A stretch of 64,000 nucleotides of DNA from Laetmonice hystrix (taxonomy: Eukaryota), in contig OZ249448.1 in the NCBI GenBank assembly GCA_965235115.1, forward strand, positions 22,010,001 to 22,074,000, given 5' to 3'. Of the stretch, positions 422-52,690 are shown one piece after another. Each line of letters starts with the position of its first letter. Within the stretch, counting starts at the first letter, position 1. The notes below the pieces were generated by a model, which had not been told where the DNA came from, searched no databases, and saw nothing but the letters and a program-made list of their open reading frames with translations. Position numbers and translations under genes: made by a program.

Positions 422-478
422 ATGGATGTCGAGTTTGCCGCCTATGCCGGGAAGGACGAGCGCACTCTACGTGCCTTG
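422..478 (+). CDS. Exon 1 of a smoothelin-like/Ig-domain protein (MDVEFAAYAGKDERTLRAL)
   Basis: ATG at 422, 19 codons, then a consensus donor TTG|GTGAGT in phase 0. Joined to 33426 it reads ...GKDERTLRAL|LDTTGEFSERRKIRAALRDL. This resembles the vertebrate smoothelin N-terminus as recalled (MADEALAGLDEGALRKLLEVTADLAERRRIRSAIREL). Confidence 0.8.
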
Positions 479-3451
479 GTGAGTGCCTTAAGGTTCCTTA
501 AAGTTAAAGGTGCTCTCAACGGCAGCACTTTTACTGCACTCAATGAATGAAATTGACGGGAGATCGGGCGTTCGGCTGACCTAGATCACCTGCCGGGGGC
601 GACTGTCGGAGGGGACCGCGTGTTTCCTTTCAAAGTTGACGGCACTCGGTGCGGGTCGATGCCGGTGAATTGTTGCGTGGTAGGGCCGGTGCTATTTCCG
701 CGTCGGTGACTGGAAAACTAGGCTACCGTTTAACGGTCCAGATTGTATTGACATGCTGGCAAACTGCAGAATGCCCTTTCTCCGAACTTTTCCTCAGCTT
801 ATTAAGATATGTTTGAAGGTGATCATTTGAATGTCAGTGTCGAGGGATCATCGGATGGGTAGGCCTCTATCAGTCAGTCGGCCTATGCACACTCTGCATG
901 TTGGCCTGTTGTAGGTCTATAGAAATCTAGGCCTTGTATTCTGAGACAATGCAGATTCCAAGACAGTGACAGTTCAATGTGACAAGTCACTGTTATTGTA
1001 AAAATCCCAAGAAGAAGGCACTGTAACTCTGACTTCATGATGTGCTGACTAACCTAAGCAGTAGTTGACTGGTAATTGTGGAATGTCATGAGCTCACCAG
1101 ACTGCATCTCCCTTCATACCTCAAGGTAGAGGTAGGAATTAATTGTATGCTCAGTGGAGAGGGTAATAATAGGCCTAGGGGCCTATATAGATATGTGGGA
1201 GGAAACATAGGGCCTACCCCCATGGTAGTCCTACATCTATACTGTTTATTAGTATGATTTAAAAGGTGAGCCGTCACCAGTGGTTTCTCACCAGTCAGTC
1301 GTCGTGTAAATCCGGATATATTGTTGTTGGGACAAAAAGAGGCATAGATCCAGGCCTAGGCTATAGGCGCCACACGGATCCAGCTTGGCGTCAGGGGGTG
1401 ATCGTTAGGTGGGGGCGGGATGGGGAGTGCTGTGGATGTTTGGGTTAAACTTCAAAGGCAATCCTACCAGGTGAAAAGGGTTTCCAAGGGGACGGGGTTG
1501 CAAACCCCATCAGTAACCCTCCTCCCCTCCCCCTACCTTAATACTTTAATTGAAAGTCGGAGGTTTGCAAATAGAAAGGGGTGTGTGAGAAACCGGGGGC
1601 AGAATCACACGAGTTTCTGACAATTTAAACGTGGTATATGGGGTCCATGTTATATTGGCTATATTGGCTATTTGCTTGGTCTGATTATAATACAGTTAAC
1701 CATCCATAAGTTGGAGGCCCCTTATTGTATCAGGGAGTATTACATACAATGGCAACATGTCGGATAGGACTGTCAACATATATAGTAGCGGCCTTCAACT
1801 ATAAATAAATGATAGCCTGCAAAAATGATATAATGCATCCAAGGTCAGGCCGGTATATAGGGATAGGTTCTTACTGAGGTACTTTTAGTAACTGTGTCCT
1901 CGAATACCATTGCAGGGATTGCCGCACTATGAAAGCTGCCAAAGATTGAAAACCACAGGCATTTTCATTCGCGATTATTATCTCTAATTGCCGTTCTGAA
2001 GGTGAGCAAACTCTGCTATAAGTAACCCGGATAAATTAGGAGTCGAGGCCTCTTTGTCGTGAGCTGGCAAGTTGAACTCAAAGTACCCGCTGGAGCCGAG
2101 TCACAGTGTACCACAAGTATAGGAGGCCTACATCCTGGGTCACATATAGGAAGGACTGTGTGAATTATGTCTCTTGAATGCGACATGATTCAAGACATGA
2201 AATGAGTTCACATTCTTCAGTTTCCGTCCTGTTTCGTTCTTAGAACTTTATAACTTATACATAATTACCATAATATGTGTGGGAACAAAACAAATTTTTT
2301 GATTAGCAAAAATGTGTTTGTTTAACTAAGTTTATTTATCAAAGATTGTTTGTAGCAATTTCAGGTCAAACTTTGTGTGGCAGCAGCGTTTATTCTTTTA
2401 TGTAGCTTACACCTGTTGGTGACATGTTAAATGACATGTTTAGTGACATGTTATGGGTGCCGACATGTCCAGATGTCACCCATCTAGTGACACAGCTGTA
2501 GTATATGTACACAAAGGCTGCCCACTACTCTCGCACTAGTTCCTCCCGATTGTAATGGCTCGGTTCATTTTGAACCAGCTTAGTATTTCCGATTTTAATG
2601 TAAAACCCCACCTGTGATGTTTAGTGTGAGAGGTTTATAGTTTACTAGAGTAGGCCCTATATGTGAGGGGTTCTAAAGCATTTATCAATTGATATAGTTG
2701 TATATTGAGTACCGCTACATTAACGTTTCATGTATCCCCATTTATATAAGTATATAAGGTTATATGTTCCATTACAAGTTTCATGAAATGAGTAATAGAG
2801 CAGTAAATTAAATACAAATTTATAAAGAGGGTGGGTGGGTGGGGTGGGAGGGGGTCTCCCCATATAGTGACATTCCACTGACGTACGTGAGCGTTCCTGT
2901 TTTGTCAGGTGTGGTAAATGTTTTACATGTCGGTGGTTGAGAGAACTCAATATGTCGACTCGGGCACGTTATATTCTAATGTTGACTTTCTCCACCGCCT
3001 GTTCGTGTATGTCACTGTGGTTACATATGGACCTCACAGGAGACGGGTGACTGGGGGAGAAATGCAAATTTGGGAGATATTAGTATGAAATACGTGGAAT
3101 TCCTCCCCAAATAACCCCAGAAAACAAACCTTGGCCTTCAGTGGAAGGTTTAAGAGTTTATTTATTGCGAGTGTTTAAACAATGGCCGAGCATGCGGTAA
3201 CTGATACGAGTGTGGCCCGCGGCCCAGGACCAGCCCAGGGCCAGCCCAGGGCTCGCACTTATAGACAGTGAGTGACTGGAGTGGAAGTGATGCCCCATGC
3301 CATGTGTCAACCTCCCTCCAGTCTGCAGGTGGGTCAGGTCCTGCTGAAGTGTATTCAGATTTTAAAAAAGTCGATTTTATGACTGGCCATGAGTCATGTT
3401 ATATGTTGTGGAGAAGAGGTTAATAATTGTGAAGGCAGTAACAATAGGATT

Positions 3452-6175
3452 CTCACTGTGCGAGGGTGTCATATCCTGACAGATGGTCACTGTGACTGTC
3501 ACCCTGACAGATACCATGGTCACTGTAAGGAGTGCCACCCTGACAGATACCATGGTCACTGTGAGGGTTGTCACCCTGACAGATACCATGGTCACTGTGA
3601 GGACTGTCACCCTGACAGATACCATGGTCACTGTGAGGACTGTCACCATGACAGATACCATGGTCACTGTGACTGTCACCCTGACAGATACCATGGTCAC
3701 TGTAAGGAGTGCCACCCTGACAGATACCATGGTCACTGTGAGGGTTGTCACCCTGACAGATACCATGGTCACTGTGAGGACTGTCACCCTGACAGATACC
3801 ATGGTCACTGTGAGGACTGTCACCATGACAGATACCATGGTCACTGTGAGGACTGTCACCATGACAGATACCATGGTCACTGTAAAGACTGCCACCCTGA
3901 CAGATACTGGTCATGGTCACTGTGAGGACTGTCACCCTGACAGATACTGGTCATGGTCCCTGTAAGGACTGTCACCCTGACAGATACTGGTCATGGTCCC
4001 TGTAAGGACTGTCACCCTGACAGATACTGGTCATGGTCCCTGTAAGGACTGTCACCCTGACAGATACTGGTCATGGTCCCTGTAAGGACTGTCACCCTGA
4101 CAGATACTGGTCATGGTCACTGTGAGGACTGTCACCCTGACAGATACCATGGTCACTGTGAGGACTGTCACCCTGACAGATACCATGGTCACTGTGAGGA
4201 CTGTCACCCTGACAGATACCATGGTCACTGTGAGGACTGTCACCCTGACAGATACTGGTCATGGTCACTGTGAGGACTGTCACCCTGACAGATACTGGTC
4301 ATGGTCACTGTGAGGACTGCCACCCTGACAGATACTGGTCATGGTCCCTGTAAGGACTGTCACCCTGACAGATACCATGGTCACTGTGAGGGTTGTCACC
4401 CTGACAGATACCATGGTCACTGTGAGGACTGTCACCATGACAGATACCATGGTCACTGTGAGGACTGTCACCCTGACAGATACCATGGTCACTGTGAGGA
4501 CTGTCACCCTGACGGATACCATGGTCACTGTGAGGACTGTCACCCTGACGGATACCACTGTCACTGTGAGGGTTGTCACCCTGACAGATACCATGGTCAC
4601 TGTGAGGACTGTCACCCTGACAGATACCACTGTCACTGCGAGGACTGTCACCCTGACAGATACCATGGTCACTGTGAGGACTGTCACCCTGACAGATACC
4701 ATGGTCACTGTGAGGACTGTCACCCTGACAGACCATGGTCACTGTGAGGACTGTCACCCTGACAGATACCATGGTCACTGTGAGGACTGTCACCCTGACA
4801 GATACCATGGTCACTGTGAGGACTGTCACCCTGACAGATACCATGGTCACTGTGAGGACTGTCACCCTGACAGATACCACTGTCACTGTGAGGGTTGTCA
4901 CCCTGACAGATACCATGGTCACTGTAAGGACTGTCACCCTGACAGATACCATGGTCACTGTGAGGACTGCCAGCCTGACAGATACCATGGTCACTGTGAG
5001 GACTGTCACCCTGACAGATACCACTGTCACTGTGAAGGTTGTCACCCTGACAGATACCATGGTCACTGTGAGGGTTGTCACCCTGACAGATACCATGGTC
5101 ACTGTGAGGACTGTCACCCTGACAGATACCATGGTCACTGTGAGGACTGTCACCCTGACAGATACCATGGTCACTGTGAGGACTGTCACCCTGACAGATA
5201 CCATGGTCACTGTGAGGGTTGTCACCCTGACAGATACCATGGTCACTGTGAGGACTGTCACCCTGACAGATACCATGGTCACCATAAGGACTGTCACCCT
5301 GACAGATACCACTGTCACTGTGAGGACTGTCACCCTGACAGATACCATGGTCACTGTGAGGACTGTCACCCTGACAGATACCATGGTCACTGTGAGGGTT
5401 GTCACCCTGACAGATACCATGGTCACTGTAAGGACTCTCACCCTGACAGACCATGGTCACTGTGAGGACTGTCACCCTGACAGATACCATGGTCACTGTG
5501 AGGGTTGTCACCCTGACAGATACCATGGTCACTGTGAGGACTGTCACCCTGACAGATACCATGGTCACTGTGAGGGTTGTCACCCTGACAGATACCATGG
5601 TCACTGTAAGGACTCTCACCCTGACAGACCATGGTCACTGTGAGGACTGTCACCCTGACAGATACCATGGTCACTGTGAGGGTTGTCACCCTGACAGATA
5701 CCATGGTCACTGTGAGGACTGTCACCCTGACAGATACCATGGTCACTGTGAGGACTGTCACCCTGACAGATACCATGGTCACTGTGAGGACTGTCACCCT
5801 GACAGATACCATGGTCATTGTGAGGGTTGTCACCCTGACAGATACCATGGTCACTGTGAAGACTGTCACCCTGACAGATACCATGGTCACTGTGAGGACT
5901 GTCACCCTGACAGATACCATGGTCATTGTGAGGGTTGTTACCCTGACAGATACCATGGTCACTGTGAGGACTGTCACCTGACAGATACCATGGTCATTGT
6001 GAGGGTTGTTACCCTGACAGATACCATGGTCACTGTGAGGACTGTCACCCTGACAGATACCATGGTCACTGTGAGGACTGTCACCCTGACAGATACCATG
6101 GTCACTGTGAGGACTGTCACCCTGACAGATACCATGGTCACTGTGAGGACTGTCACCCTGACAGATACCATGGTC
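3452..6175. repeat. Minisatellite, 36-bp unit ctgacagataccatggtcactgtgaggactgtcacc (~75 copies; 30/34/40-bp variants)
   Basis: Direct reading. The frame-breaking variants and open frames on both strands indicate non-coding DNA. Confidence 0.97.
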
Positions 6176-8130
6176 AGAGGGGCTCAGGGAGGGCTGCAGC
6201 AATGACAGTTGGAGGACATTTGTTTGGTCTGTAACTTGCTTTCCCAATTTTATTGCTTAATTTGGGATAATGAATTTGAAAATGCAGTTCCTGAAGCTAC
6301 TTGCTCATTTGTTCCTTGCAAAGTCTGTTGTAATCGTGACTGTGTCAGCGGGTATTTGTGTCTCAGAGTTACTGTCACCCTGGGGTAATTCGGAGGGTAT
6401 TTTTGTCCAAGTTGACATCCTTCCCTGACATGTTGTGTTGACCTCTGACCTGACCCTGGTCTTAGCCCCTGGAGTTAAGGCAGTCATTAAAGATGTTGGG
6501 GGGGGGGGGGGGTGTTGGTGGCGTGCCAGGCTAACAACGTCTGTGCCACAAACTAACGACAAATACCAGAGTAGGGTGACACATGGTGGTCACCCCAAAC
6601 TTCCTGCCCATGGCCCCACTCAGGCAATCCCCCTACAGTGTCAGCAGTATAACATGACAAGTATTTATGATATCATTGTAGTATAAACATAACGGAGATA
6701 TAGGTAGATACAGGTAGTAGGTGTTGATTAGTGCATGGAACCCTCCCTCCTGGGGTCGACACTCAGATTCATTCACTCCATCCCATTCACTTTGGTGTAA
6801 GCTAGGAGACCCAACTTGGCAAATTTAAAAAGCATAGTTCTTCATTCGACGTCTTACATTTTCCAGATAATTTTGTCCTTTCCATCAAAATATTACTCTG
6901 TGAAATACATACCCCGGTAGACAAATCATGTTGAGCCACCGAGGCGGCACCTGTGTCAACAGTTGTAGATACTAAACGAACCTTTGATTGGAATCTGTTG
7001 GGAGCCATACTGTCTGTCTACCTTTGACAATACCCCATACACTTAGTGTACATTGTCACTCCTTTGAGGAGATTAATATTCTATACCTTTGTTTATCACT
7101 AATCCTACTTCTAAGAGGTGCTCCTATTATCTGACATGTTAGTCAGGGTCGCTACAGTATCAAAGGCTAGGCACCAGGCAGGTCTCAAAAGGTCATGATA
7201 TTATCAGTGTCAGGTCATGTCAAACTTGAAGACGGACACCTGAGAGATGATGAAGTAACGTTCCCGTAACCATCGCGGGGAAAACTTGATGGACTTCTGC
7301 TGCTGACCAACATAATATCCATCATGATCCACCGTAACGTTTTGTTAATTACAAGTAACTTTGTCCTATATTAAACTAGTTGAGTGTAAGCGAAATGCAG
7401 TGCTATCCGATAGAATTCATTCTCCCCACATAAATGTGGACACTTGCTTTTGTGTTCTATATGTGCACTCTCTTATTTTGACCTGTTCAGAATTTTTTAA
7501 TTGGACCATTGAATGACACGCAGACAATATTTGACTTTACTTGTTCATGTATTTTTTTACTTGAATTATGAAAGACCTGGCGGATTTCACACCACTTTAC
7601 CTATTAAGTCAGTAATATGTAAGGAATTCCCGTGAGATATTTTTACAAAAATGGTATTTGTAGAGTTGACATAACTGAACCTTCAGCCAACAATAAATCT
7701 TGGAACCACATACCAATAATATGTAACATAAGCTATGCAGAAGCTATGGGTGCAGAACTGCATGGAAAGTACGCTTCAAACGCTATTATGATGTCCGGGA
7801 TGAATTGTGTGTCAATTTCACGGCAAGTTTGAGAGATTTATCCCCTCCAAGGCGAAGTCTTAAGCAATAGTTTGTGGAGAAGGTCATCAAATGACTATGT
7901 TAAAGTATGAACCTGATGTTTGTGACTGTAGATGATGGTTCACACTTCAGTGGCGTGACTGAGAAAGGGGCGGAAAGAAATGGCTGAGAATTAGGAGGAG
8001 GAAAAACGGTTTGACATTAAAAGTCAGGGTTCGTGTGAAGTACATAATTTGTATTCTTGAATTCAAGGAATTACTGTGGCATGTATAGCGGCCGGGGTAT
8101 GTGCAAATGTCAGCTTGCAGACATAAAGAT

Positions 8131-9888
8131 ATTTGAGGTGTGACATTGTCTGAGTTCCGGTATGTCAGTTGGTTCTGGTATCTGAGGTGTGACAGTGTCG
8201 GAGTATGTCAGTTGGTTCTGGTATCTGAGGTGTGACAGTGTCGGAGTATGTCAGTCGGTTCTGGTATCTGAGGTGTGACAGTGTCGGAGTATGTCAGTGG
8301 GTTCTGGTATCTGAGGTGTGACAGTGTCGGAGTATGTCAGTTGGTTCTGGTATCTGAGGTGTGACAGTGTCGGAGTATGTCAGTCGGTTCTGGTATCTGA
8401 GGTGTGACAGTGTCGGAGTATGTCAGTTGGTTCTGGTATCTGAGGCGTGACAGTGTCGGAGTATGTCAGTCGGTTCTGGTATCTGAGGTGTGACAGTGTC
8501 GGAGTATGTCAGTTGGTTCTGGTATCTGAGGTGTGACAGTGTGGGAGTATGTCAGTCGGTTCTGGTATCTGAGGTGTGACAGTGTCGGAGTATGTCAGTT
8601 GGTTCTGGTATCTGAGGTGTGGCAGTGTCGGAGTACGTCAGTTGGTTCTGGTATCTGAGGTGTGGCAGTGTCGGAGTACGTCAGTTGGTTCTGGTATCTG
8701 AGGTGTGACAGTGTCGGAGTATGTCAGTTGGTTCTGGTATCTGAGGCGTGACAGTGTCGGAGTATGTCAGTCGGTTCTGGTATCTGAGATGTGACAGTGT
8801 CAGAGTAGGCCCTATGTCAGTCGGTTCTGGTATCTGAGATGTGACAGTGTCAGAGTATGTCAGTTGGTTCTGGTATCTGAGGTGTGACAGTGTCGGAGTA
8901 TGTCAGTTGGTTCTGGTATCTGAGGCGTGACAGTGTCGGAGTATGTCAGTCGGTTCTGGTATCTGAGATGTGACAGTGTCAGAGTAGGCCCTATGTCAGT
9001 CGGTTCTGGTATCTGAGATGTGACAGTGTCGGAGTATGTCAGTCGGTTCTGGTATCTGAGGTGTGACAGTGTCGGAGTATGTCAGTCGGTTCTGGTATAT
9101 GAGGTGTGACAGTGTCGGAGTATGTCAGTCGGTTCTGGTATCTGAGATGTGACAGTGTCAGAGTATGTCAGTTGGTTCTGGTATCTGAGGTGTGACAGTG
9201 TCGGAGTATGTCAGTTGGTTCTGGTATCTGAGGTGTGACAGTATCGGAGTATGTCAGTGGGTTCTGGTATCTGAGGTGTGACAGTGTCGGAGTATGTCAG
9301 TTGGTTCTGGTATCTGAGGTGTGACAGTGTCGGAGTATGTCAGTTGGTTCTGGTATCTGAGGCGTGACAGTGTCGGAGTATGTCAGTCGGTTCTGGTATC
9401 TGAGATGTGACAGTGTCAGAGTAGGCCCTATGTCAGTCGGTTATGGTATCTGAGATGTGACAGTGTCAGAGTATGTCAGTCGGTTCTGGTATCTGAGATG
9501 TGACAGTGTCAGAGTAGGCCCTATGTCAGTCGGTTCTGGTATCTGAGGTGTGACAGTGTCGGAGTATGTCAGTCGGTTCTGGTATCTGAGGTGTGACAGT
9601 GTCGGAGTATGTCAGTTGGTTCTGGTATCTGAGGTGTGACAGTGTCGGAGTATGTCAGTTGGTTCTGGTATCTGAGGTGTGACAGTGTCGGAGTATGTCA
9701 GTCGGTTCTGGTATCTGAGGTGTGACAGTGTCGGAGTATGTCAGTCGGTTCTGGTATCTGAGGCGTGACAGTGTCGGAGTATGTCAGTCGGTTCTGGTAT
9801 CTGAGGTGTGACATTGTAGGAGTATGTCAGTCGGTTCTGGTATCTGAGGTGTGACATTGTAGGAGTATGTCAGTCGGTTCTGGTATCT
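8131..9888. repeat. Minisatellite, 43-bp unit tctgaggtgtgacagtgtcggagtatgtcagttggttctggta (~40 copies; 50-bp variant with taggccc insert)
   Basis: Unit starts at 8181 and 8224, with degenerate flanks on both sides. Confidence 0.97.
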
Positions 9889-26920: not shown

Positions 26921-29900
26921 ATGCCAAGTCATGGTGAGCATCATGGTTCCATTACTAGCAACCATGACAACGAGTCCAATCACCTTACCAGAGATGACAT
27001 TGGAAGCTGGGCTAAGATTAACTGCCGGTATTCGCCAACTCCTCCTGGGTTGGAATTCCCAGGACTGCACACATACACATCTGTCAACCCTGAGATAGGT
27101 TCTTACAGTGAGCCGTACGAGAGTCACTATACGGAACCATCACCTCGCAGACACAGCAGTCGTGTGGACCTGCAACCTGAGTCACTGTACCCTGACTCCT
27201 TGCCGTCTTACAAAGACTTGGAAAAGTTTTATTCAGTAGATGATGCTACGGAGCAACCATCACCTCGCCAAGGCAGACACAGCAGTCGTGTGGACCTGCA
27301 ACCTGAGTCACTGTACCCTGACTCCTTGCCGTCTTACAAAGACTTGGAACAGTTTTATTCAGTAGATGGTCCTGTTGACTTAGAGGCAGAAGGAAACGAA
27401 GCTTTGACTGGGTTGTCATTCTGTACTGGCCAGTTTAACAGGGGAGCTCAGTCAGCTCATCAGGAGGACCTGTTATTGGTTGATTCACATCCACTAACAT
27501 CAGCTGCTGGTGCACTGTTCAGGCAAAGGTCCAGTTTGGATCTGGGCCAAGGTGACAGCTTTAATCCTTCATCACCAGACTTCCACAATGGACGTAAAAC
27601 TCGACATCATCGTTATAAAAGTCAAATAGTTGACAATTGCGCGGGTGAGGCGCTGCAGTCAAGACTCAGTGATATAGACGTGATCGATGACTTTCGTTGT
27701 CAGTCTCAAGTTGATGTTGGCCAGCAGTATATAGATGTGAAAGGTCTGGGTAACTCCTGTCATTACCTGCCACAAACTTCCACTGATGACGATACAAACA
27801 CTCATGTCACACAAGACTCGAGAAGATCAGAGGATTCCAGTGGATTGCACAGACATGGTTTGAGTGGCAGCTGTGCCAACATCTTCCTTGACTCGTCATC
27901 TGGAGGAGATGAGTTTATTTTACCCATGGATTACCCCTCTGCACTCAGACTGACCAGTGAGGACGGTCAGTTTGTTGTAGAGGTCCGACGAATGAACCAG
28001 GAATTGAATCACCCGGGATCTGTCACATGTGACCTCATGACGGATGAAAGTGTACCTGGGGAATGTTACCAGGTGCGACCACAGAGCACTGGATCAGACA
28101 CCCGGCAAAGTTCAGGCCAGGCGGCAGAAGTAGCGGAGCAATTCTTGCCTGGACTCAGCAGTCATAAGGCCCTTCAGCATGATGTCGCCAACAGTGAGCG
28201 AATGGCCTTCCGAGAGAATGTACCAACCCCACCACCAAGAGGTCAATCAAGGTCCTTTCATTGTATACCAGAGGTTCTGAGAACTGAAGAAGGACGCTGC
28301 TGGAAGAGACACAGTAGCTTGTCTTTATATCAGGAGGAACAAGATGCCATAGAAGACCACTATGACGAGAATGTTAGACCTCAGGAGGCACCACCAGACT
28401 ATGACAGACTTCCTCGTGAGAAAAGAACGCTGGAAAATTTAAGGCTGAACAGGAGAAGCAGGTCACTAGGCAGATATAGAAGCAATCCTCTTGAAAGTTC
28501 AACAGCTTATTTAAGCAGGAGTGCAAGAGATATTCCTACCAAGTCCCAGCAAATGTCACGACAAGAAAACAGAAACTTTAGTCCAGAGTTTACAAGGAAA
28601 AAGCTTTCTTTAGAAAGGAGTAGATCAGGTCAGGGAGACAGAAAGGGCCTTGGAAAAGACATGGAGAGGTCTCAAAGAGGACCTTCCAAGTTCTCAAAAG
28701 AGGACCGTAATGTTGAAGAAGTCAGAGATGATTATAGAAGAAGCGTCATGAAACGTGATTGGACAAAAGGACATCAAGTTAGAGACAACTACCTCGCTGT
28801 CCCTGGACGAGCTGCAGAGGAGGCTCGACTTTACACTACAAACAGAAGGGAACGGTCTCCACAGAGAAGAGAATCCCCCAGGGCGAGCCGAACTAGGGAC
28901 ACCAGGAGACACCAGTTGGAAGATGAAACGCTACTTGGAACAACACCACCCTCAAAGAGGTACACTCACTTGCACGGCCATGAGGACCGTGATGGCCGCC
29001 ATGTTTTTTTCAGGGACAAAGAAGATGACGGATTTCCACAGAGGATAAATAATGGGCCTGATTTTATCCACAGGGATATCCTTTATTCTCAATCTGACCT
29101 TGGTTATGGGAGTCAACTGTGGGATTCAAGTTCTCCCAGTAGGGAGTACAAGACTCTGGAGGAGGATTGTGAATGGTTTGCTCCAAACAGACTATCACAG
29201 GCTGTTCAACAAAGGCCGAGAAGGAAGAGGAGCTACTCAAGTAATAGTCATTTAGAAAGGGACTTAGATGGTCACAATGGTTTCAGTGGACAGACACGTA
29301 AGGAAGCATTCCAGAGGAGAACCCCATATGATGACCATTATATGGAGATGACTTCATCAAATTATGGGCCTCCCCCACGACCCCCATCTCCGTACACAGA
29401 GATGGAGCTCCGCGAGTATAGAACCCCTTACTTCAGTTCACAGAGGGAGACTCCTCCCAAGGAGGAGAAGATGAGCCTTTTCCAGGCCACTCCCATCCAG
29501 ACTGGAAGCTTACATGATGTGAGACAAGAAAGAGTGACAAGACCTTGGCATAAAAGAGAATTCCCATCATGTGAGAGTGCAGAGAACAGACGGTTTAGAA
29601 GGAGCCCAGAACGAACGCCAAAAAGGGTTGACAACAGTGCATTCAGCAAAGCTGTACGAGAAAGTGGATATTTCAGAGAGATTGGTGACAGAAGTGCTGG
29701 TACTTATAACAGGGATCCCTCCCATGATGTAGATGGACGTGGCAGTTTTCATACAAGGCAGGCCAGTAGGCATGGTGATGAGACGAGGCATGGTGGTGAT
29801 ATGAGGCATGGTGATGAGATGAGGCATGGCAGCAGGAGGCCACTTTACCCAGATGAGGAAATAGTGAACCGAGGGATTGACCCTTGGAAGGACGACCTGT

Positions 29901-31894
29901 CGTATATTGAGAGACCCTCTGAGGACTCCAACATCCAGTGGCTGTGGAAAGAACTCGAAGACGGATACAGGAAAGTCAATGGTGAACGTTTTGACCATCA
30001 AATAACATCTGACCGCTACGAGAGCAAGGCGTTTGACGGAGGGGAGGGAAGACAAGAGTTCACTTCTCCGGAACCAGACCCGAATGGAGAAAACTGGATG
30101 GAGTACTCGATGTACAAAGGAAAGAAAACCAACCAGAAATCATACGATAACCACTACAAGTCAGATACAGGATCCGTACAAGGGACCGTAGGACCACCCA
30201 ACCATGGTACTGGGTATAGAAAACCTGCGAGACAGCCACACAAATCCAATATTTCTGATGATATTAAAAACAAAAAAGATATGCCGGGCGTCAGAAATTT
30301 TTCATCTGCTAGAAGCTCAGCACCAGCTGCTCCAAGAAGACGGAGCAGGAGGTCAGTGAACTATTTGGACGGTCCATGGAAGGTTGGGAAGGAATGTGAG
30401 TTCATTATCGACTTAAGAAACCTAGAGCAGACTGACAGAAGACGCTGTCTTAGTACCCCAAATCTGTTCTTTCAAGATCAACCTTCTCAAGAGCGTTTGT
30501 CAAGAGGTAGGACCAAAAAAGTCCAATTTGAGAGTGATATGAAACCATCTACGAGGTATAGTGAGCAAGAGAAAAAGATGAACTCTGACAGAAAGAGTTT
30601 AAATCCTAGTGAATGCGGCCAAGGTGTTGCATCAGCAAAGGAGAATTCCCAATATGGCCATGTTTCTGCTCCGAGGGACATTCCTACTCATAGCGTCAGG
30701 ACTGAACATAAGGGATATCTCTCTGATGGTGATAGTCGAGAAAACAAAGACGATATTGGTAAGTTCCTAAACATGAAGCACAGTATCTCGGAGCAGATGG
30801 CACCATTTGAGAGAGACAGTTCGGGAAAAGTGGTTCCCGACTTTTACATTAGTTACGAGATAACTGAAGGGAAAAGACCCTCTGGTCCCGCAGACATGAC
30901 CGTATCAGAGGATGAGTCTAAATCTCCAGGAATTGGAAGCTGTTGTGAAGAGGACACACGTAAGACCACCACTCTTGCCCCAAATGTCATGAAAGAAGAC
31001 GACGGACAGGAAGTCCTCATTGACCTTGACATGGATTGCCAGACCAGTAAAGCCTCTTCCATCCAGTATGAATACCAGGAACCTGAGCTAGGTTGTGGGA
31101 ATCCTGCCAGGTTTTTAGACAGCGTTGGCCATGAGGAAGAGGACAAGGGCAGCTCGGAGAACAGTTTTGGAAGTCACTGGACCGGGGACACTGTGAGCTT
31201 AGGTCAGATGATTGAAGACAATGACATAACCCTGGAGGATGTCAGGACTTCCACCTTGGAGCAGCCTCCAGAAGCCGGGGACCTCCTGGAGAGGAACCTC
31301 CTCTTCCCAATGGATGATATCTACATCACGATCGAGATGCTGGAGGAGGGATGGGAAGATGGTGAGGAGGAAGCAGAGCTGGATGCAGGTCACCCAGGTG
31401 TGACAGAAGGCGATGAGGTTGACCAGGAGTACACAGACATCCTGTACGACCTTACCAGTTCATCATTCCATCCATCACTCTCTGTGTACGGCGCCGTGAG
31501 CTCGGACGTCCTGGCACATGGAGGTTCTACCAGTGACCCGCAGTGGACCCTTGGGGCGGGCTGCCTTGATTACCCCGACCTCACACAGACAAGGGAAGGG
31601 AACCAAGGAGGACTAAGGGAGGTCCTCACCCAGACACTGGAGGACCTCGCACAGACACGGGAAGGAGACCCAGGAAGGCTGGGGGAGGACCTCGCACAGA
31701 CACGGGAAGGAGACCCAGGAGGGTTGGAGGAGGGCCTCGCACACACACAGGACGGACAGCCAGGAAGGTTGCAGGAGGACAGCCCGGAGAGGATACCAGG
31801 AGACCCATGTGATGCCGACCTGGAGGTTTTAGTGGAGGTACCTGTACTCAACACTCACGTGGTCATGCAGTGGATGCAACACTCCTGGGTCCTG
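26921..31894 (+). CDS. Giant alternative first coding exon: ~1,640-1,660 aa, S/R/E/D-rich, probably intrinsically disordered
   Basis: Uninterrupted 1701-codon non-satellite ORF. Acceptor ...gttttcag ends at 26716, and an in-frame TAA at 26909 precedes ATG 26921. Two phase-0 donors: GAG|GTACCT (exon end 31837) and CTG|GTGAGT (end 31894), both in frame with 33426. Confidence 0.8.
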
Positions 31895-33425: not shown

Positions 33426-33740
33426 TTGGACACGACCGGGGAGTTCAGTGAACGGCGGAAGATTCGAGCAGCCTTACGGGACCTGATTGATAATTCCACG
33501 TCTGTATACAAGAAGAGTAGACGTGACGATTTGAACATTGACATGGAGGCCATCAAACGTCACAGTAATATCATGGAGGCATTCCCTAACACTGCCGACA
33601 GACGGGCATCGTTTCAGTTCCGTAAACGACATGGTATGTTGTTAACAAAGGAAAACATTCAGAACAGACTGGAGAGTATCAGGAACTCACACGCCAACCC
33701 GTATGAAGACATTGCCGACATGGAGGAGCTCAACAAAAAG
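33426..33740 (+). CDS. Exon: second half of smoothelin motif 1, linker, first half of motif 2 (LDTTGEFSERRKIRAALRDL...EDIADMEELNKK)
   Basis: Acceptor tttctcccgcacag, donor AAG|GTATGG, 315 nt, phase 0-0. Confidence 0.9.
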
Positions 33741-36511: not shown

Positions 36512-36627
36512 GGCTGAACATGGCAGGATCCGCTGAGAATCAGGGTGAAATAAATAGCTCGGGTGAACGGGTGGATCCTGAGGTCAGGCAAGTGGGTTAA
36601 CAGTCCATAAAGGGCGGTCAGTGGTCA

Positions 36628-38243: not shown

Positions 38244-38319
38244 TTGAAGGAAGCCACCGAGGTGGAGGAGAGGGTCCAGATCCGGACTGCCATCAGAAAG
38301 CTGAGAGAAAGTCAGAACG
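38244..38319 (+). CDS. Exon: second half of smoothelin motif 2 (LKEATEVEERVQIRTAIRKLRESQN)
   Basis: Acceptor cctttctcttgttacag, donor ACG|GTGAGT, 76 nt, phase 0-1. Confidence 0.92.
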
Positions 38320-42044: not shown

Positions 42045-42214
42045 GAGATGAGAAAGAAGAGACAGTGCGACGATCAGCTGACCAACCCGAACAATCGGTG
42101 GCCACCAACAATGGGACGATCCAACACGGCGGCAGCGACCTGAACGGTGTCGCCAGGGGGCGCCCCACTCCCGACTACAGTGAGATCAGTGACATCCATC
42201 AACTTGAGGACATG
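42045..42214 (+). CDS. Exon: linker and first half of smoothelin motif 3 (GDEKEETVRR...SEISDIHQLEDM)
   Basis: Acceptor atattttgatccag, donor ATG|GTGAGC, 170 nt, phase 1-0. Confidence 0.88.
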
Positions 42215-42239
42215 GTGAGCATTTCAGTATGGAGTTAAC

Positions 42240-45511: not shown

Positions 45512-45593
45512 TTGTTAGACACAACAGACTATTCTGAACGCAAGAAGATCCGGACTGCCATTCATGATCTCCGCAAGGAACGACTAGCTACGA
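45512..45593 (+). CDS. Exon: second half of smoothelin motif 3 (LLDTTDYSERKKIRTAIHDLRKERLAT)
   Basis: Acceptor tctgtttattgttccag, donor CGA|GTAAGT, 82 nt, phase 0-1. Confidence 0.92.
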
Positions 45594-45734: not shown

Positions 45735-46732
45735 TATCAAGAAGACTTTCTCGCGCGGAGGACACCGTGACCGTCCCAAACAGTGAACGCCAGGAGAGCC
45801 ACCTGGTGGTGAAACTTAGGGAGACAGCGCCATCTGACGATAGTACCCGACAGATCAACCACGCCGAGGATACCGACCACCGTCAGGTGACTAGGATCGG
45901 CTCCTCCAGGGTGGTCACGACTAACAGGAGGAACGCTCAGGAGGAAACGGCTAGTAAAGTCTCCAGTGACGTCCTGGAGAGGATGTCATCAAAACCTACT
46001 GACAGGGGTGTGTACCCCTGGAGCAGTGCCGCTAAACAGGAGAACGGCCTCGGAGACGCTACAGAGGAGGGGGATGACGATGTCTCACCCACGGAGCTAA
46101 ACTCAGAGGATCATGGGAAGGACAGCACTGAGCCACCCAAAGAAATGGACTCGGAGGATCATGGGAAGGATAGCACTGAGCCACCCAAGGAAATGGACTC
46201 GGAGGATCATGGGAAGGATAGCACTGAGCCACCCAAAGAAATGGACTCGGAGGATCATGGGAAGGATAGCACTGAGCCACCCAAGGAAATGGACTCGGAG
46301 GATCATGGGAAGGATAGCACTGAGCCACCCAAGGAAATGGACTCGGAGGATCATGGGAAGGGTAGCACTGAGTCACCCAAGGAAATGGACTCGGAGGATC
46401 ATGGGAAGGGTAGCACTGAGGTCTCAAGCATTGAGATAAATTCAGAGGATTATGGGAAGGGGAGCACTAAGTCGTCAACCAGGGAGATGAACTCGGAAGA
46501 TTATGGGAAGGGTAGTAATAATGTCTCAACCGTCATGGGGATAAACTCAGGGGACCATGGGGAAGTCAGTACAGATGTCTCGCCCATAGAGATAAACCCA
46601 GAGGATCATGGGAAGGATAGCACTCATGTCTCATCCCTGGAGGAGCTGACCTCAAAGGATCATGGGAAGGAAAGCCACAATGACCCGCCACCGGAAGTTA
46701 CGTCAAAGCCGAAAACAGCCATGGATGACTTG
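45735..46732 (+). CDS. Exon: low-complexity linker with 16-aa repeats, ending ...KTAMDDL
   Basis: Acceptor tttatttatttgactgtag, donor TTG|GTTAGT, 998 nt, phase 1-0. It lies within ORF 45656-46759. Confidence 0.88.
46094..46690 (+). repeat. Coding tandem repeat, 48-bp/16-aa unit EMDSEDHGKDSTEPPK (~12 copies, degenerating 3')
   Basis: Unit starts at 46094 and 46142. All length variants (48/51/54 bp) preserve frame. Confidence 0.92.
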
Positions 46733-47134: not shown

Positions 47135-48145
47135 CCCTGTCAGATGACAACCATGGTAGTGTTACCATTAACTTTGCCCTGTCAGATGACAACCATGGTA
47201 GTGTTACCATTAACTTTGCCCTGTCAGATGACAACCATGGTAGTGTTACCATTAACTTTGCCCTGTCAGATGACAACCATGGTAGTGTTACCATTAACTT
47301 TGCCCTGTCAGATGACAACCATGGTAGTGTTACCATTCACTTTGCCCTGTCAGATGACAACCATGGTAGTGTTACCATTAACTTTGCCCTGTCAGATGAC
47401 AACCATGGTAGTGTTACCATTAACTTTGCCCTGTCAGATGACAACCATGGTAGTGTTACCATTAACTTTGCCCTGTCAGATGACAACCATGGTAGTGTTA
47501 CCATTAACTTTGCCCTGTCAGATGACAACCATGGTAGTGTTACCATTCACTTTGCCCTGTCAGATGACAACCATGGTAGTGTTACCATTAACTTTGCCCT
47601 GTCAGATGACAACCATGGTAGTGTTACCATTAACTTTGCCCTGTCAGATGACAACCATGGTAGTGTTACCATTAACTTTGCCCTGTCAGATGACAACCAT
47701 GGTAGTGTTCCCATTAACTTTGCCCTGTCAGATGACAACCATGGTAGTGTTACCATTAACTTTGCCCTGTCAGATGACAACCATGGTAGTGTTACCATTA
47801 ACTTTGCCCTGTCAGATGACAACCATGGTAGTGTTACCATTAACTTTGCCCTGTCAGATGACAACCATGGTAGTGTTACCATTAACTTTGCCCTGTCAGA
47901 TGACAACCATGGTAGTGTTACCATTAACTTTGCCCTGTCAGATGACAACCATGGTAGTGTTACCATTAACTTTGCCCTGTCAGATGACAACCATGGTAGT
48001 GTTACCATTAACTTTGCCCTGTCAGATGACAACCATGGTAGTGTTACCATTAACTTTGCCCTGTCAGATGACAACCATGGTAGTGTTACCATTAACTTTG
48101 CCCTGTCAGATGACAACCATGGTAGTGTTACCATTAACTTTGCCC
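47135..48145. repeat. Near-perfect minisatellite, 42-bp unit ccctgtcagatgacaaccatggtagtgttaccattaactttg x24
   Basis: Only three single-base variants were seen. The array runs directly into the 3' splice site at 48155. Confidence 0.98.
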
Positions 48146-48155
48146 TTTTCTCCAG

Positions 48156-48231
48156 CTTGATGACTGCAAAGAGTTTGATCGTCGGCGTGAGATACGGGCA
48201 CAGATTCGTGATATTCGCTCACAGATCCGAG
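48156..48231 (+). CDS. Exon: second half of smoothelin motif 4 (LDDCKEFDRRREIRAQIRDIRSQIR)
   Basis: Acceptor ctttgcccttttctccag, donor GAG|GTGAGA, 76 nt, phase 0-1. Same length as exon 38244-38319. Confidence 0.9.
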
Positions 48232-48396: not shown

Positions 48397-49074
48397 AGAA
48401 TACGATCAAGATGTCGTCACGTCACACGAAGGTTGATCTTGGGAAACCACCTTTGTCTAGGATGTCATGTTTGACTGACACCTCACGACCTCCAAAAGAC
48501 GTGTCGTTGACCAGATCCTTCTCAACCAAGGAGCAAGGCCGCAACTTCTTAGCTCGTAAAATACAGTCACAAATCGTCCGGTCCAATTCCACCCGGGAGA
48601 AAGGGACCAGGAATAGTGCTCCTCCTGGAACTCTTCAATCAAAGGAGGTGACGAATGCTGCCGCAGTAGGAAGTCCATATAAAGTAGATAGTAGCCGAAA
48701 TCAAATGTCGGATTATTCTTCATTCAGTGCCATAAAAACCAGACGAATCAAAAGAGGAGACGTGAAACCAGTAGATGACTTCATCCACTTGTCGGCGCCA
48801 GCCATCCAACCAGAACCTCCGCAGGACCACCTCAGTAAGGACAAGTCGAGTTCTAGCGATGAAATGTTGGATTGTGTGGATGCTAAGATTATTGTAGCAA
48901 GTCTAACTGAGCACCAGCGTAAGTCTGTGAGGAGTAGCGAGGGACGCAAGGAACCACGGCGGGTGTTAACCATGGGGGACCGAACCCTCAACATGTCCAA
49001 GGCCAGTAGTGGTTACGGTAGCGTGTCCGGGTCGTCCGAGGAGGAAGAGAAGGAAGAGGACGAACAGGATGCAG
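48397..49074 (+). CDS. Exon: S/R/K-rich linker ending in an acidic tract
   Basis: Acceptor gtttgtttgaatgcag, donor CAG|GTGAAA, 678 nt, phase 1-1. It lies within ORF 48387-49115. Confidence 0.85.
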
Positions 49075-49212: not shown

Positions 49213-49491
49213 TTGTGCCAGAAATTCTGCAGTCTCTCTCTGATATGACCTTCACTGATGACGAGCCAGTGACCTTGACCTGCAAAATTTCGGGAGGACC
49301 AAAGGTCAAAGTTCTGTGGTACAAGGACTCGAATCTGTTGAAATCTTCAGAAAATGTCCAGCAGAGTTTGGATGGAACTGAGGCGAGATTAACCCTAACT
49401 GACGTGTGTGAGGAGGACTCCGGAGAGTATAAGTGTGTCGTCACAACCTCAGCGGGTTCCAAGGAGACTGCTGCCTACGTCACCATCACAG
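49213..49491 (+). CDS. Exon: I-set Ig domain 1
   Basis: Motifs VTLTCKISGGP..V.WYKD and DSGEYKC. Splice sites ccaacag and CAG|GTAGGC, 279 nt, phase 1-1. Confidence 0.95.
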
Positions 49492-50211: not shown

Positions 50212-50505
50212 AAAACACCAGTATGGTGGCTCCCTCTGTTGAGAAGCCTCTGAGTGACGTCATCGTCAAAGACGGTGCTGACGTGACGTTTGAGTGTCAC
50301 GTCAGTGGTAAGCCTCCTCCCAAGCTGACTTGGTTCAAGGGTAGTCAACTCCTCAAGGACAGTCCAGATTTCCGGCAGACTTACCAGGACGGCGTGGCAC
50401 GGATGACAATGGAAGATGTCTTCCCAGACGACAACGGGTCATACATCTGTGTGGCTGTGAACGAGACGGGGGAGTGTCAAACTACGTGTACCCTCACCGT
50501 CCAAG
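50212..50505 (+). CDS. Exon: I-set Ig domain 2
   Basis: Motifs VTFECHVSGKPPPKLTWFK and DNGSYICVAVN. Splice sites ttacag and AAG|GTGGGC, 294 nt, phase 1-1. Confidence 0.95.
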
Positions 50506-50990: not shown

Positions 50991-51290
50991 AGGAGGTGAC
51001 AGAAGGTGTGGAGGCTCCAGACATCGTCACAGTCCTTGAAAACATTGAGGCGGTAGATGGCGACACTGTCACCTTTAAGTGTCAGATATCCGGCGTGCCC
51101 AAACCGATGCTCACCTGGTACAAGGATGATAAACTGCTACCAAACTGTAGCGACTTCGAGCAGACGTACGACGGGAAGACAGCCATGTTGGTGATAGACG
51201 AAGTGTTTGAGGACGACACGGGAGAATACAAAGTCTTGGCTAAAAACTCGGCCGGTGACGCTTCCATCGCTGCCCTCCTCAATGTCCGAG
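50991..51290 (+). CDS. Exon: I-set Ig domain 3 (F-strand Cys replaced: YKV)
   Basis: Motifs VTFKCQISGVPKPMLTWYKD and DTGEYKV.AKN. Splice sites ccactcacag and GAG|GTATGT, 300 nt, phase 1-1. Confidence 0.95.
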
Positions 51291-51731: not shown

Positions 51732-52046
51732 GGACACCACAGACCCCTGAGGTATTGCCACCTGCGAAACCCAACTTTACCTCCATCCTTCCGTCCCAAC
51801 TGACTGTGATAGATGGCGACTCCGCACACCTCGAGTGCCGACTGACTCCCAGCCCCCGCCAGACGGTAATCTGGTACAAAGACTCTAAGATTATACGGCC
51901 AGGGATCGGCTACAAACAAACGTTTGACGGGACGCTGGCAAAGTTTGACATCAGGGAAGTATTCCCGGATGACGCTGGAAGATACGAGTGTGCAGCCAAA
52001 AACGATTTTGGAGAGGATAGATGTAGTTGTCAGGTTAACGTTAAAG
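51732..52046 (+). CDS. Exon: I-set Ig domain 4
   Basis: Motifs AHLECRLTPSP...VIWYKD and DAGRYECAAKN. Donor AAG|GTAGGA. The acceptor cttgcag has a weak pyrimidine tract. 315 nt, phase 1-1. Confidence 0.9.
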
Positions 52047-52463
52047 GTAGGACAAAGGCTCTTGATATTATTTACAGCAGCCAATCAGTGTCTTGATTAC
52101 CCGATATGTGACAACAGCTTGAAATGCTACTGGATTGGCTGAAAATACTTGCTGAATATCTAAGTTAGTTGTTGCGTCGCATGCTAGGAATTGAAATAGG
52201 GGCTATCCCATGCTAGACCTATTCTAGTGAAAATGTTGGGTTTTCTGGCAGACATGCGTAAACGGTTTCCTTGAAGAACATTGGTTGAACTTGTGCATGT
52301 TATTGGCAGGTGATTAGCGGCATGGGTGAGTACGGAGAATGTGGTGCTAATAATAGGCCTTCAGGTGTATGAAGAAATATTTAAATGTACGTATACGAAA
52401 GGTAGACTGAATTTGGGAAAACTAGAGCATGAAAATCATGATATGTTTCTATTCTAACAACAG

Positions 52464-52690
52464 AAGAAAGAAGAGAACGGAACTTCGATGAGACATACAA
52501 GAATCTGAACTCAGCGAAATCGAAGCCGCTAGGTGGCAGCACGAGTCTGAGTCGCGTCCATTCGATGAACGTGAGGCTGCAGGATGAGAAAAATCGCCTC
52601 CGACCTCCAGGGGGCGCCAAGGGTTTGAGTCGGGTTCAGTCACTGAAGGCGAAACTGGACAACAACATGGATCAGTGGACCAAACATGAG
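52464..52690 (+). CDS. Exon following the Ig array (EERRERNFDETYKN...SLKAKLDNNMDQWTKHE)
   Basis: Acceptor ttctaacaacag, donor GAG|GTGAGT, 227 nt, phase 1-0, no stops. Confidence 0.85.

What the first reader, a model, noticed from the sequence alone, without database searches (positions are those of the whole stretch)
422..52690. Unusual architecture: four smoothelin-type motifs fused to a tandem of four titin/MLCK-type I-set Ig domains
Seen: 14 exons from 422 to 52690, skipping the giant exon, join in phase without stops into ~1,299 aa. The order is motif1-motif2-motif3-(16-aa repeats)-motif4-linker-Ig1-4-tail. Known: smoothelins are actin-associated proteins with a short helical motif (LxxxxDxxERxxIRxAxRxL) and a C-terminal CH domain, and I-set arrays typify titin/palladin/MLCK-type cytoskeletal scaffolds. 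Inference: I do not know this combination from characterised smoothelins, so it may be a lineage-specific muscle scaffold joining the two modules.
Basis: partly seen in the sequence, partly recalled or inferred. Interest (0 to 1): 0.7.

Follow-up and report, generated by a model that had tools for sequence, protein, structure and literature searches.

The report
Worm smoothelin gene with four Ig domains
The stretch is the front three quarters of this marine worm's only smoothelin gene, a muscle actin-associated protein; its long form carries four titin-like Ig domains, as gene models of molluscs, other annelids, a ribbon worm and a bryozoan already show, so it is real but ordinary.

Summary
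A GT-AG exon chain on the + strand from 422 to 52690 reads without stops. It encodes four Smoothelin motifs, a 16-aa repeat array, a linker, four I-set Ig domains and a tail.

The chain is not a whole gene. It has no stop codon and ends on a consensus phase-0 donor. All other Smoothelin matches in the 627-Mb genome lie just downstream on the same strand. They are followed by the genome's only smoothelin-type CH domain, about 25 kb past the tail exon.

The same order, Smoothelin x3-4, I-set x4-5, Smoothelin, CH, is annotated as one protein in about 35 spiralian species. These include the annelid Owenia fusiformis, many molluscs, a nemertean and a bryozoan. They carry misleading names such as 'titin homolog', 'unc-89-like' and 'MLCK'. 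Owenia's 83-kb gene has the same exon plan.

So this is the worm's orthologue of a long smoothelin isoform seen across spiralians, not a lineage-specific new scaffold. I found no RNA run for this species, so the junction to the CH exons is inferred. I found no paper describing the architecture. Interest is low to moderate.

The parts
422..478 (+). First coding exon (19 aa, ATG at 422). It carries the N-terminal half of Smoothelin motif 1.
   Evidence: A stop lies just upstream of the ATG, and the donor is TTG|GTGAGT in phase 0. The N-terminus ...YAGKDERTLRAL|LDTT... matches the N-termini of Saccoglossus, Patella and amphioxus smoothelins. Owenia's first coding exon is also 57 nt.
26921..31894 (+). 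Giant open exon (about 1,658 aa to the donor at 31894; the ORF runs to 32023). Candidate alternative first exon whose end also supplies an N-half for motif 1.
   Evidence: 1,701-codon ORF with donor CTG|GTGAGT in phase 0 at 31894. It has no Pfam domain and no word-based homologue. A relative's genome has a 1,719/1,757-aa ORF about 0.9 kb upstream of the exon-2 homologue.
33426..33740 (+). Exon 2: C-half of Smoothelin motif 1, a conserved spacer, and the N-half of motif 2.
   Evidence: Pfam Smoothelin 33.5 bits. It is 64% identical to ORF P0001 of a related annelid genome, with the block ASFQFRK.HGMLLTKENIQNRLES nearly invariant.
38244..38319 (+). Exon 3 (76 nt, phase 0 to 1): C-half of Smoothelin motif 2.
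   Evidence: Pfam 19.8 bits alone; 41.1 bits once spliced to the N-half.
42045..42214 (+). Exon 4 (phase 1 to 0): spacer plus the N-half of motif 3.
   Evidence: Sites are. The spliced motif 3 scores 55.3 bits across the junction.
45512..45593 (+). Exon 5 (82 nt, phase 0 to 1): C-half of Smoothelin motif 3.
   Evidence: Pfam 28.3 bits.
45735..46732 (+). Exon 6: an acidic, disordered segment holding the 16-aa (48-nt) repeat array at 46082-46670. It ends with the weak N-half of motif 4.
   Evidence: TRF finds period 48 with about 12 copies. The donor is GACTTG|gttagt in phase 0.
48156..48231 (+). Exon 7 (76 nt, phase 0 to 1): C-half of Smoothelin motif 4.
   Evidence: Pfam 22.2 bits; 30.9 bits with the outside profile.
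48397..49074 (+). Exon 8 (phase 1 to 1): Ser/Lys-rich linker.
   Evidence: The acceptor is at 48397. No Pfam domain.
49213..49491 (+). Ig1, one phase 1-1 exon.
   Evidence: I-set 77.2 bits.
50212..50505 (+). Ig2, one phase 1-1 exon.
   Evidence: I-set 89.3 bits. The best PDB matches are titin.
50991..51290 (+). Ig3, one phase 1-1 exon.
   Evidence: I-set 81.9 bits. The best PDB matches are titin.
51732..52046 (+). Ig4, one phase 1-1 exon.
   Evidence: I-set 68.8 bits. It groups with mollusc Ig2 in a domain tree, support 90/89.
52464..52690 (+). Tail exon (phase 1 to 0). It has two LSRV[HQ]S[ML] motifs, no stop codon, and ends on a consensus donor.
   Evidence: The donor is GAG|GTGAGT in phase 0. 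A phase-0 acceptor lies at window-equivalent position 64172 (L001:172). Owenia has the same tail exon followed by a long intron and then a Met-containing exon.

Best explanation
The finding is the 5' three quarters of the long isoform of this annelid's single smoothelin gene. The gene spans about 79 kb (window 422 to about 15 kb past the window end).

Inferred full order: Smoothelin x4 (each split by a phase-0 intron), a 16-aa repeat region, a linker, four titin-type I-set Ig domains (one phase 1-1 exon each) and a tail. Then comes an 11.5-kb intron. After it follow a fifth Smoothelin domain, whose first exon also holds the start codon of a short isoform, a Lys/Glu-rich coiled-coil segment, a Thr-rich segment and the C-terminal smoothelin-type CH domain.

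Inferred function, from what is established for smoothelin, CH domains and tandem I-set arrays in titin, palladin and kettin: a filament-associated scaffold of muscle cells. The CH domain and the helical Smoothelin motifs would tie it to the actin-based contractile apparatus. The Ig tandem would add a semi-rigid spacer and a further docking or filament-binding module.

An internal start would give a short Smoothelin + CH form, as in vertebrate smoothelin-A and -B. Domain content, exon structure and orthology are shown here. Transcript continuity and function in this worm are inferred.
For: 1. All Smoothelin matches above about 17 bits in the 627-Mb genome sit in this one locus. Two of them lie 0.2 and 1.3 kb beyond the window end on the same strand.

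2. Exons encoding a smoothelin-type CH domain follow at L004:3717-5017. Pfam CH scores 41.3 bits. The only other CH exons found in the genome are 43-60% identical.

3. The tail exon has no stop and ends on a phase-0 consensus donor. The next Smoothelin exon (L001:172-270) has a strong phase-0 acceptor and is open from that acceptor through its ATG.

4. A search with the CH exon returned single proteins with Smoothelin x3-4 + I-set x4 + Smoothelin + CH in Patella, Mizuhopecten and Mytilus.

5. A second search found the Pfam trio PF07679 + PF12510 + PF00307 in about 35 spiralian species. These include the annelid Owenia fusiformis, the nemertean Lineus and the bryozoan Watersipora.

6. Owenia's 83-kb gene has the same plan. 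It has a 57-nt first coding exon and every Smoothelin domain is split at the same point. Four of its five Ig domains are single exons. A tail exon is followed by a 37.6-kb intron, a Met-containing N-half exon and a 25-aa C-half exon.

7. Mollusc and Owenia long proteins read straight through the conserved Met (...TMPSYETIDDEDELHKM...). This Met is the start of the short transcript in a related annelid.

8. An intron-less 2.9-kb contig from public run ERR7672905 (L009) encodes Smoothelin, Ig and CH in one 680-aa ORF. So Ig and CH are co-transcribed in at least one organism.

9. A smoothelin-like protein is enriched in scallop catch (smooth) muscle at both RNA and protein level (PMC5963113).
Against: No RNA run for this species is on record, so no junction is observed directly.

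A related annelid's short transcript (L008) has its own 5' UTR with an in-frame TAG four codons before the ATG. The downstream unit can therefore be expressed on its own. In that species the long form would need an acceptor at or after that TAG.

Reading through the donor at 52690 reaches a stop at 52880, and an AATAAA lies at 53572. An Ig-only isoform without a CH domain cannot be excluded.

I could not fully chain the exons between L001:5391 and the first CH exon; one small exon is missing.

One-to-one orthology of the Ig domains with those of molluscs is unresolved, apart from worm Ig4 with mollusc Ig2.
Confidence: 0.78

Rival explanations
1. There are two adjacent genes. An upstream Smoothelin-Ig gene ends just after the tail exon, by read-through to the stop at 52880 or in an unseen terminal exon. 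A separate, canonical short smoothelin gene (Smoothelin + CH) starts at the ATG just past the window end.
For: The short form exists as a transcript with its own 5' UTR and an upstream in-frame stop in a related annelid. A stop lies at 52880 and an AATAAA at 53572. No RNA from this species shows the junction.
Against: The tail exon ends on an 8/9 consensus donor, and the 63 read-through codons look non-coding. The phases of donor and downstream acceptor match. About 35 species, including an annelid with the same exon plan, have a single protein. An alternative internal promoter explains the short transcript without needing a second gene, as with vertebrate smoothelin-A and -B (established knowledge).
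Confidence: 0.15
2. One reading: a lineage-specific new muscle scaffold that fused smoothelin motifs with a titin/MLCK-type Ig array, distinct from smoothelin proper.
For: The combination is absent from the vertebrate, amphioxus, hemichordate, horseshoe-crab and insect smoothelins sampled. I found no paper that describes it.
Against: The same architecture, with a CH domain, is annotated in molluscs, Owenia, a nemertean and a bryozoan. The locus is the genome's only smoothelin locus. Exon 1 and the N-terminus are orthologous to those of ordinary smoothelins.
Confidence: 0.04
3. The Ig part is a decaying or unexpressed duplicate, or the one-protein models in other species are prediction chimeras of neighbouring genes.
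For: No expression data exist for this worm. Many orthologue names are automatic and inconsistent.
Against: All 13 exons are open with GT-AG sites, and the Pfam scores are high. Exon 2 is 64% identical to a relative's ORF, with a nearly invariant block. The intron-less contig L009 joins Smoothelin, Ig and CH in one ORF. Many RefSeq isoform sets agree with each other.
Confidence: 0.03

Closest known systems
Predicted long smoothelin of other spiralians: Owenia fusiformis (P0201/P0204, UniRef name 'Smoothelin'), Patella caerulea A0AAN8KHH4 (P0054), Mizuhopecten yessoensis OWF42675.1 / XP_021369460.1 (P0097), Mytilus, Crassostrea, Haliotis, Aplysia, Octopus, Lineus and Watersipora
   Same: The domain order is the same: N-terminal Smoothelin repeats, four (2-5) I-set Ig domains, a further Smoothelin domain and a C-terminal CH domain. 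With Owenia the exon plan is also shared: a 57-nt first coding exon, split Smoothelin domains, mostly single-exon Ig domains, and a long intron before the Met-containing exon.
   Different: The worm has four N-terminal motifs where most others have three. It has its own 16-aa repeat array and a giant optional exon. The tail and linker sequences are not alignable. Ig-by-Ig orthology is unresolved. None of these proteins has been studied experimentally, as far as I could find.
Vertebrate smoothelin (SMTN-A/B) and smoothelin-like proteins SMTNL1 and SMTNL2
   Same: They share Smoothelin helical motifs and a single C-terminal CH domain. The N-terminus starts with a Smoothelin motif. Long and short forms are likely to come from alternative starts. 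They are associated with smooth muscle. CH-exon identity is about 60-70% (the isoform biology is established knowledge).
   Different: Vertebrate, amphioxus and Saccoglossus proteins have no Ig domains.
Titin I-band/Z-disc Ig tandems; palladin, myotilin and kettin type actin-associated Ig arrays
   Same: They share tandem I-set domains with short linkers. The worm domains' best solved-structure matches are titin I65-I70 and Z1Z2.
   Different: Neither this locus nor the orthologues have kinase or Fn3 domains. The array has only four domains and sits inside a smoothelin. RefSeq names such as 'titin homolog', 'unc-89-like' and 'MLCK' reflect the Ig domains only.
Insect smoothelin genes (for example Drosophila kikkawai 'smoothelin isoform X10', and Stomoxys, Eupeodes and Glossina long isoforms named mucin-2 or titin)
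   Same: They have Smoothelin motifs, a C-terminal CH domain and very long disordered optional regions. These regions are comparable with the worm's giant exon of about 1,650 aa.
   Different: My Ig profile detected no Ig domain in them.

Membership tests
Smoothelin family (Pfam PF12510 with a C-terminal CH domain) | At least one Smoothelin domain above Pfam's gathering score | tested here: met
   Single exons score 33.5 and 28.3 bits against a cut-off of 23. The downstream exon scores 27.7-28.5 bits. Spliced copies score 31-55 bits against a profile built from other species.
Smoothelin family (Pfam PF12510 with a C-terminal CH domain) | A smoothelin-type CH domain encoded at the 3' end of the same locus and strand | tested here: met
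   Pfam CH scores 41.3 bits at L004:4040-4378, with the C-terminal piece at L004:4826-5017. Named hits to this exon are mostly smoothelin proteins or smoothelin-architecture proteins under automatic names. It is the only such exon in the genome.
Smoothelin family (Pfam PF12510 with a C-terminal CH domain) | The Smoothelin and Ig part and the CH domain lie on one transcript in this worm | not testable with these tools
   No RNA run holds the stretch. It is supported only indirectly, by matching phases and by orthologues.
Spiralian long smoothelin (Smoothelin repeats, I-set x4-5, Smoothelin, CH) | Domain order and number | tested here: met
   Worm: Smoothelin x4, Ig x4, tail, Smoothelin, CH. Patella, Mizuhopecten, Mytilus and Owenia show the same order.
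Spiralian long smoothelin (Smoothelin repeats, I-set x4-5, Smoothelin, CH) | Shared exon-intron plan with an annelid orthologue | tested here: met
   Owenia (L010) has a 57-nt first coding exon. Its Smoothelin domains are split between ...L and L..., with 25-aa C-half exons. A tail exon is followed by a 37.6-kb intron and a Met-containing exon.
Spiralian long smoothelin (Smoothelin repeats, I-set x4-5, Smoothelin, CH) | One-to-one orthology of the four Ig domains | tested here: inconclusive
   In the domain tree only worm Ig4 groups with mollusc Ig2 (90/89). The other worm Ig domains are unresolved.
Titin / MLCK / obscurin (unc-89) type Ig-kinase proteins | I-set domains of the titin type | tested here: met
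   The top PDB matches are titin 3b43 and 6fwx, at 158-224 bits summed over their domains.
Titin / MLCK / obscurin (unc-89) type Ig-kinase proteins | A protein kinase domain and/or Fn3 domains | tested here: not met
   No kinase or Fn3 hit appears in any exon or long ORF scanned. Neither appears in the full orthologues' Pfam lists. I did not scan every short open stretch of the introns.

The most novel reading that the evidence does not exclude
The Ig-bearing long smoothelin may be an innovation shared across spiralians that no one has studied experimentally and that databases mislabel as titin, unc-89 or MLCK.

Its exon design has two features. Every Smoothelin motif is split by a phase-0 intron, and all Ig and spacer exons are symmetric in phase 1. 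This design would let the cell make many in-frame isoforms with 0-5 Ig domains while always rebuilding an intact motif at each junction.

Such isoforms would form a tunable actin-filament scaffold of spiralian smooth and obliquely striated muscle, comparable in role to palladin or kettin.
Probability: 0.3. Interest if true: 0.5.

Novelty: new member of a known kind. Interest (0 to 1): 0.3.

Why it matters
For this genome, the result gives a corrected gene model. The Smoothelin-Ig chain and the downstream Smoothelin-CH unit should be annotated as one smoothelin gene with long and short isoforms.

More widely, smoothelin in molluscs, annelids, a nemertean and a bryozoan carries a titin-like Ig tandem. 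This tandem is missing in the deuterostomes and arthropods sampled. Automatic names hide the fact. It is a small point for the evolution of muscle proteins, and it gives a candidate thin-filament or dense-body scaffold to test in spiralian muscle. It does not open a new kind of system.

Tried and rejected
**RNA support.** They are almost certainly the source DNA. I therefore did not use read laying, since it could not show splicing.

**Giant exon.** A word-based protein search with the giant exon gave nothing. With only 100 words drawn from a low-complexity query, this blank says little.

**Choice of query.** I did not use an Ig exon for the single exhaustive representative search. Whole-protein scores would have filled the list with titin-like giants. 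I used the CH exon instead.

**Exon-2 search.** This search is limited to proteins of 69-220 aa. It found one ORF from a related annelid genome, ERZ26222911. That sample's DNA could not be served, so I could not compare the giant exon or the downstream acceptor with it.

**Downstream chain.** I could not complete the exon chain between L001:5391 and the first CH exon. The best acceptor there is in phase 2, so at least one small exon is still unplaced.

**Ig domain tree.** It did not resolve orthology, apart from one pairing.

**Literature.** Three searches found no description of a smoothelin with Ig domains.

**Tool limits.** Spliced proteins have no reference. I therefore analysed them only in local scripts and did not send them to Pfam or the large searches.
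Full report
**What is in the window**

The window lies at C18:22010001-22074000 of a 627-Mb, 35-contig assembly. Earlier notes of this scan describe the animal as a marine worm. The window holds no N.

On the + strand I rebuilt a chain of 13 exons from stop-free stretches and splice-site scans. Every intron is GT-AG. The chain stays in phase and translates to 1,289 aa without a stop.

**Domains**

- Pfam on single exons gives four Smoothelin matches of 33.5, 19.8, 28.3 and 22.2 bits, against a cut-off of 23.
- It gives four I-set domains of 69-89 bits.
- The linker, the repeat exon and the giant ORF have no Pfam domain.
- The two sub-threshold Smoothelin scores are an artefact of exon-wise scanning. 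Each domain is split by a phase-0 intron between its N-half (...ELxKL) and its C-half (LDTTxxxERRKIRxAxRxL).
- A profile built only from Smoothelin domains of ten other species scores the spliced worm copies at 41.2, 41.1, 55.3 and 30.9 bits. For three of the four copies the match runs across my predicted junctions, which also supports those junctions.
- The 16-aa repeat is a 48-nt array of about 12 copies at 46082-46670.
- The best solved-structure matches of the Ig domains are titin I65-I70 and Z1Z2.

**The chain is not a complete gene**

It has no stop codon. The last exon (52464-52690) ends on GAG|GTGAGT in phase 0. Reading on gives 63 hydrophobic, junk-like codons before a stop at 52880.

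A scan of the whole genome with the Smoothelin model found seven matches, six of them in this locus. Two lie just beyond the window end on the same strand. I fetched the flanks. The downstream exons are:

- L001:172-270, with a strong phase-0 acceptor. It is open from that acceptor through an ATG and reads ...AAKMPDTDKDIDSIDDEDVLHKM. Pfam aligns it to Smoothelin profile positions 4-26.
- L001:1296-1371, a 76-nt exon (MTDTTDFNLRKKIRARMRDVREAKS). Pfam aligns it to profile positions 29-49, at 28.5 bits.
- A Lys/Glu-rich exon, a Thr-rich exon and an optional phase 1-1 exon.
- Three exons of a smoothelin-type CH domain ending in a stop at L004:5018. Pfam CH scores 41.3 bits.

No other smoothelin-type CH exon exists in the genome; the next best are 43-60% identical. 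This is therefore the worm's only smoothelin locus. The donor at 52690 and the acceptor at L001:172 are compatible in phase.

**Evidence from other species**

No RNA run for this species is on record, so I turned to other species. An exhaustive search with the 49-aa CH exon returned many smoothelins. Local profiles and Pfam showed three mollusc proteins with the predicted full order, Smoothelin x3-4, I-set x4, Smoothelin, CH:

- Patella caerulea A0AAN8KHH4, 1,920 aa.
- Mizuhopecten yessoensis OWF42675.1, 2,458 aa. RefSeq names an isoform 'muscle M-line assembly protein unc-89-like'.
- Mytilus galloprovincialis, 1,618 aa (names).

A second search, with the Patella C-terminal 820 aa, listed the Pfam trio I-set + Smoothelin + CH in about 35 species:

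- Molluscs: gastropods, bivalves and Octopus.
- The annelid Owenia fusiformis (P0201 and P0204).
- The nemertean Lineus longissimus.
- The bryozoan Watersipora subatra.

Their names range from 'Smoothelin' to 'titin homolog', 'myosin light chain kinase' and 'serine-rich adhesin'.

Smoothelins of amphioxus, Saccoglossus, a fish, a horseshoe crab and insects have Smoothelin repeats and a CH domain but no Ig. The insect long forms instead carry thousands of disordered residues.

**Gene structure in Owenia**

The Owenia gene spans 83 kb. Mapping its protein back onto the DNA gave the following:

- A 57-nt first coding exon, exactly as long as the worm's 422-478.
- Every Smoothelin domain split at the same point (...QLQVL|LNDAP..., ...ILEKL|LEDTK...), with 25-aa C-half exons.
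- Single-exon Ig domains, except the first, which is split into two exons.
- A tail exon followed by a 37.6-kb intron.
- Then an exon that ends with the N-half of the last Smoothelin domain and contains a conserved Met, and then the 25-aa C-half exon.

The worm has the same arrangement with an 11.5-kb intron. The worm's N-terminus, MDVEFAAYAGKDERTLRAL|LDTTGEFSERRKIRAALRDL, aligns with the N-termini of Saccoglossus (..GGKDETTLRKLLDTT..), Patella and amphioxus smoothelins. So 422 is very likely the true start of the long form.

**Isoforms**

A 2.2-kb contig from public run SRR19644530 (L008) comes from a related annelid. Its CH exon is 88% identical to the worm's. It encodes a short Smoothelin + CH protein that starts at the Met corresponding to L001:211. 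It has a 251-nt leader and an in-frame TAG four codons upstream. The downstream unit can therefore be expressed on its own, as with vertebrate smoothelin-A versus -B (established knowledge).

That TAG is preceded by a pyrimidine-rich stretch and could itself be the acceptor AG. It therefore does not exclude a long form in that species, but I could not test this. Mollusc and Owenia long proteins read straight through the same Met.

A 2.9-kb intron-less contig from ERR7672905 (L009) encodes Smoothelin, one Ig and CH in one 680-aa ORF. This is direct evidence, in an unidentified spiralian-like organism, that the Ig and CH domains are co-transcribed and that the number of Ig domains can vary.

In the worm, all Ig exons, the linker and several downstream exons are phase 1-1. 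All N-half exons end in phase 0 and all C-half exons start in phase 0. Many exon-skipping products would therefore stay in frame. That is an inference, not an observation.

**The giant ORF**

The ORF at 26921-32023 (1,701 codons) ends with a phase-0 donor at 31894. That donor would also build motif 1. The ORF has no Pfam domain and no word-based homologue. In a related annelid genome, an ORF of 1,719 or 1,757 aa lies about 0.9 kb upstream of the exon-2 homologue on both contigs carrying it, probably haplotypes. Exon 2 itself is 64% identical to that homologue, with a nearly invariant block. The giant exon is thus probably a real alternative first exon, but this is outside the finding.

**Function**

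Function is inferred from family knowledge only. Smoothelins are proteins of the contractile apparatus of smooth muscle with a C-terminal CH domain. Tandem I-set arrays are filament-binding or spacer modules in titin, palladin, myotilin and kettin.

A scallop study found a smoothelin-like protein enriched in catch (smooth) muscle at both RNA and protein level (PMC5963113). I could not link that protein to the Ig-bearing isoform. I found no paper describing a smoothelin with Ig domains.

**Verdict**

But it is the front part of the smoothelin gene itself, it has a CH domain downstream, and it is already widely annotated in spiralians. It is a new member of a known, uncharacterised kind. I set interest at 0.3. 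The main remaining doubt is the missing RNA evidence for the 52690-to-L001:172 junction in this worm.

Noticed in passing
window 26921-32023 (+): A 1,701-codon disordered ORF lies inside intron 1. Its phase-0 donor at 31894 would rebuild Smoothelin motif 1. A related annelid genome keeps an ORF of 1,719 or 1,757 aa at the same relative place. No sequence homologue was found by word search.
   Followed up: partly
window 3483-6176, 8160-9888, 15938-16421, 19665-20567, 22337-24323, 35856-36511, 39869-40854, 42230-44939, 47135-48146: The introns of this gene are unusually rich in long, well-kept minisatellite arrays, with periods of 21-198 nt, up to 96 copies and 78-99% matches. The 42-nt x 24 array ends 10 nt before the acceptor of exon 7.
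   Followed up: partly
window 52464-52690 (tail exon): The exon holds two copies of LSRV[HQ]S[ML]. The equivalent mollusc tails carry four or five [RK]R[ST]ES[AM][RK]-type motifs. These look like sites for basophilic kinases, which recalls the PKA/PKG regulation of SMTNL1. This comparison comes from memory and was not tested.
   Followed up: no
window exons 38244-38319 and 48156-48231; L001:1296-1371: Three of the five C-half Smoothelin exons are exactly 76 nt and run from phase 0 to 1. A fourth is 82 nt. The C-half of motif 1 is fused into the 315-nt exon 2. Owenia's C-half exons encode 25 aa. The motif repeats therefore seem to have arisen by duplication of a two-exon unit spanning a conserved intron.
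   Followed up: partly
L002/L005 (C18:22102000-22113500, + strand): The next gene downstream has open stretches that look like a HAD-type hydrolase, a phosphotransferase-like kinase fold and an acyl-CoA dehydrogenase. This resembles an ACAD10/11-like fusion. I judged it by eye only.
   Followed up: no
L010:24149-33079 (Owenia fusiformis, - strand): Two unrelated genes on the opposite strand sit inside the 37.6-kb intron between the tail exon and the Met-containing exon of Owenia smoothelin. Their Pfam hits (NHL, Death) are only weak or faint.
   Followed up: no
proteins P0165, P0166, P0173, P0189, P0216: RefSeq names for the orthologues mislead: 'titin homolog', 'myosin light chain kinase, smooth muscle', 'muscle M-line assembly protein unc-89-like' and 'serine-rich adhesin for platelets'. 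None has a kinase domain in its Pfam list, and all carry Smoothelin + CH.
   Followed up: partly
L009 (run ERR7672905, contig of 2,905 nt): This contig encodes a 680-aa protein with one Smoothelin motif, a single Ig domain and a CH domain, but no second Smoothelin motif before the CH. It is either a short-Ig isoform or a species with a reduced array. The organism is not identified.
   Followed up: partly
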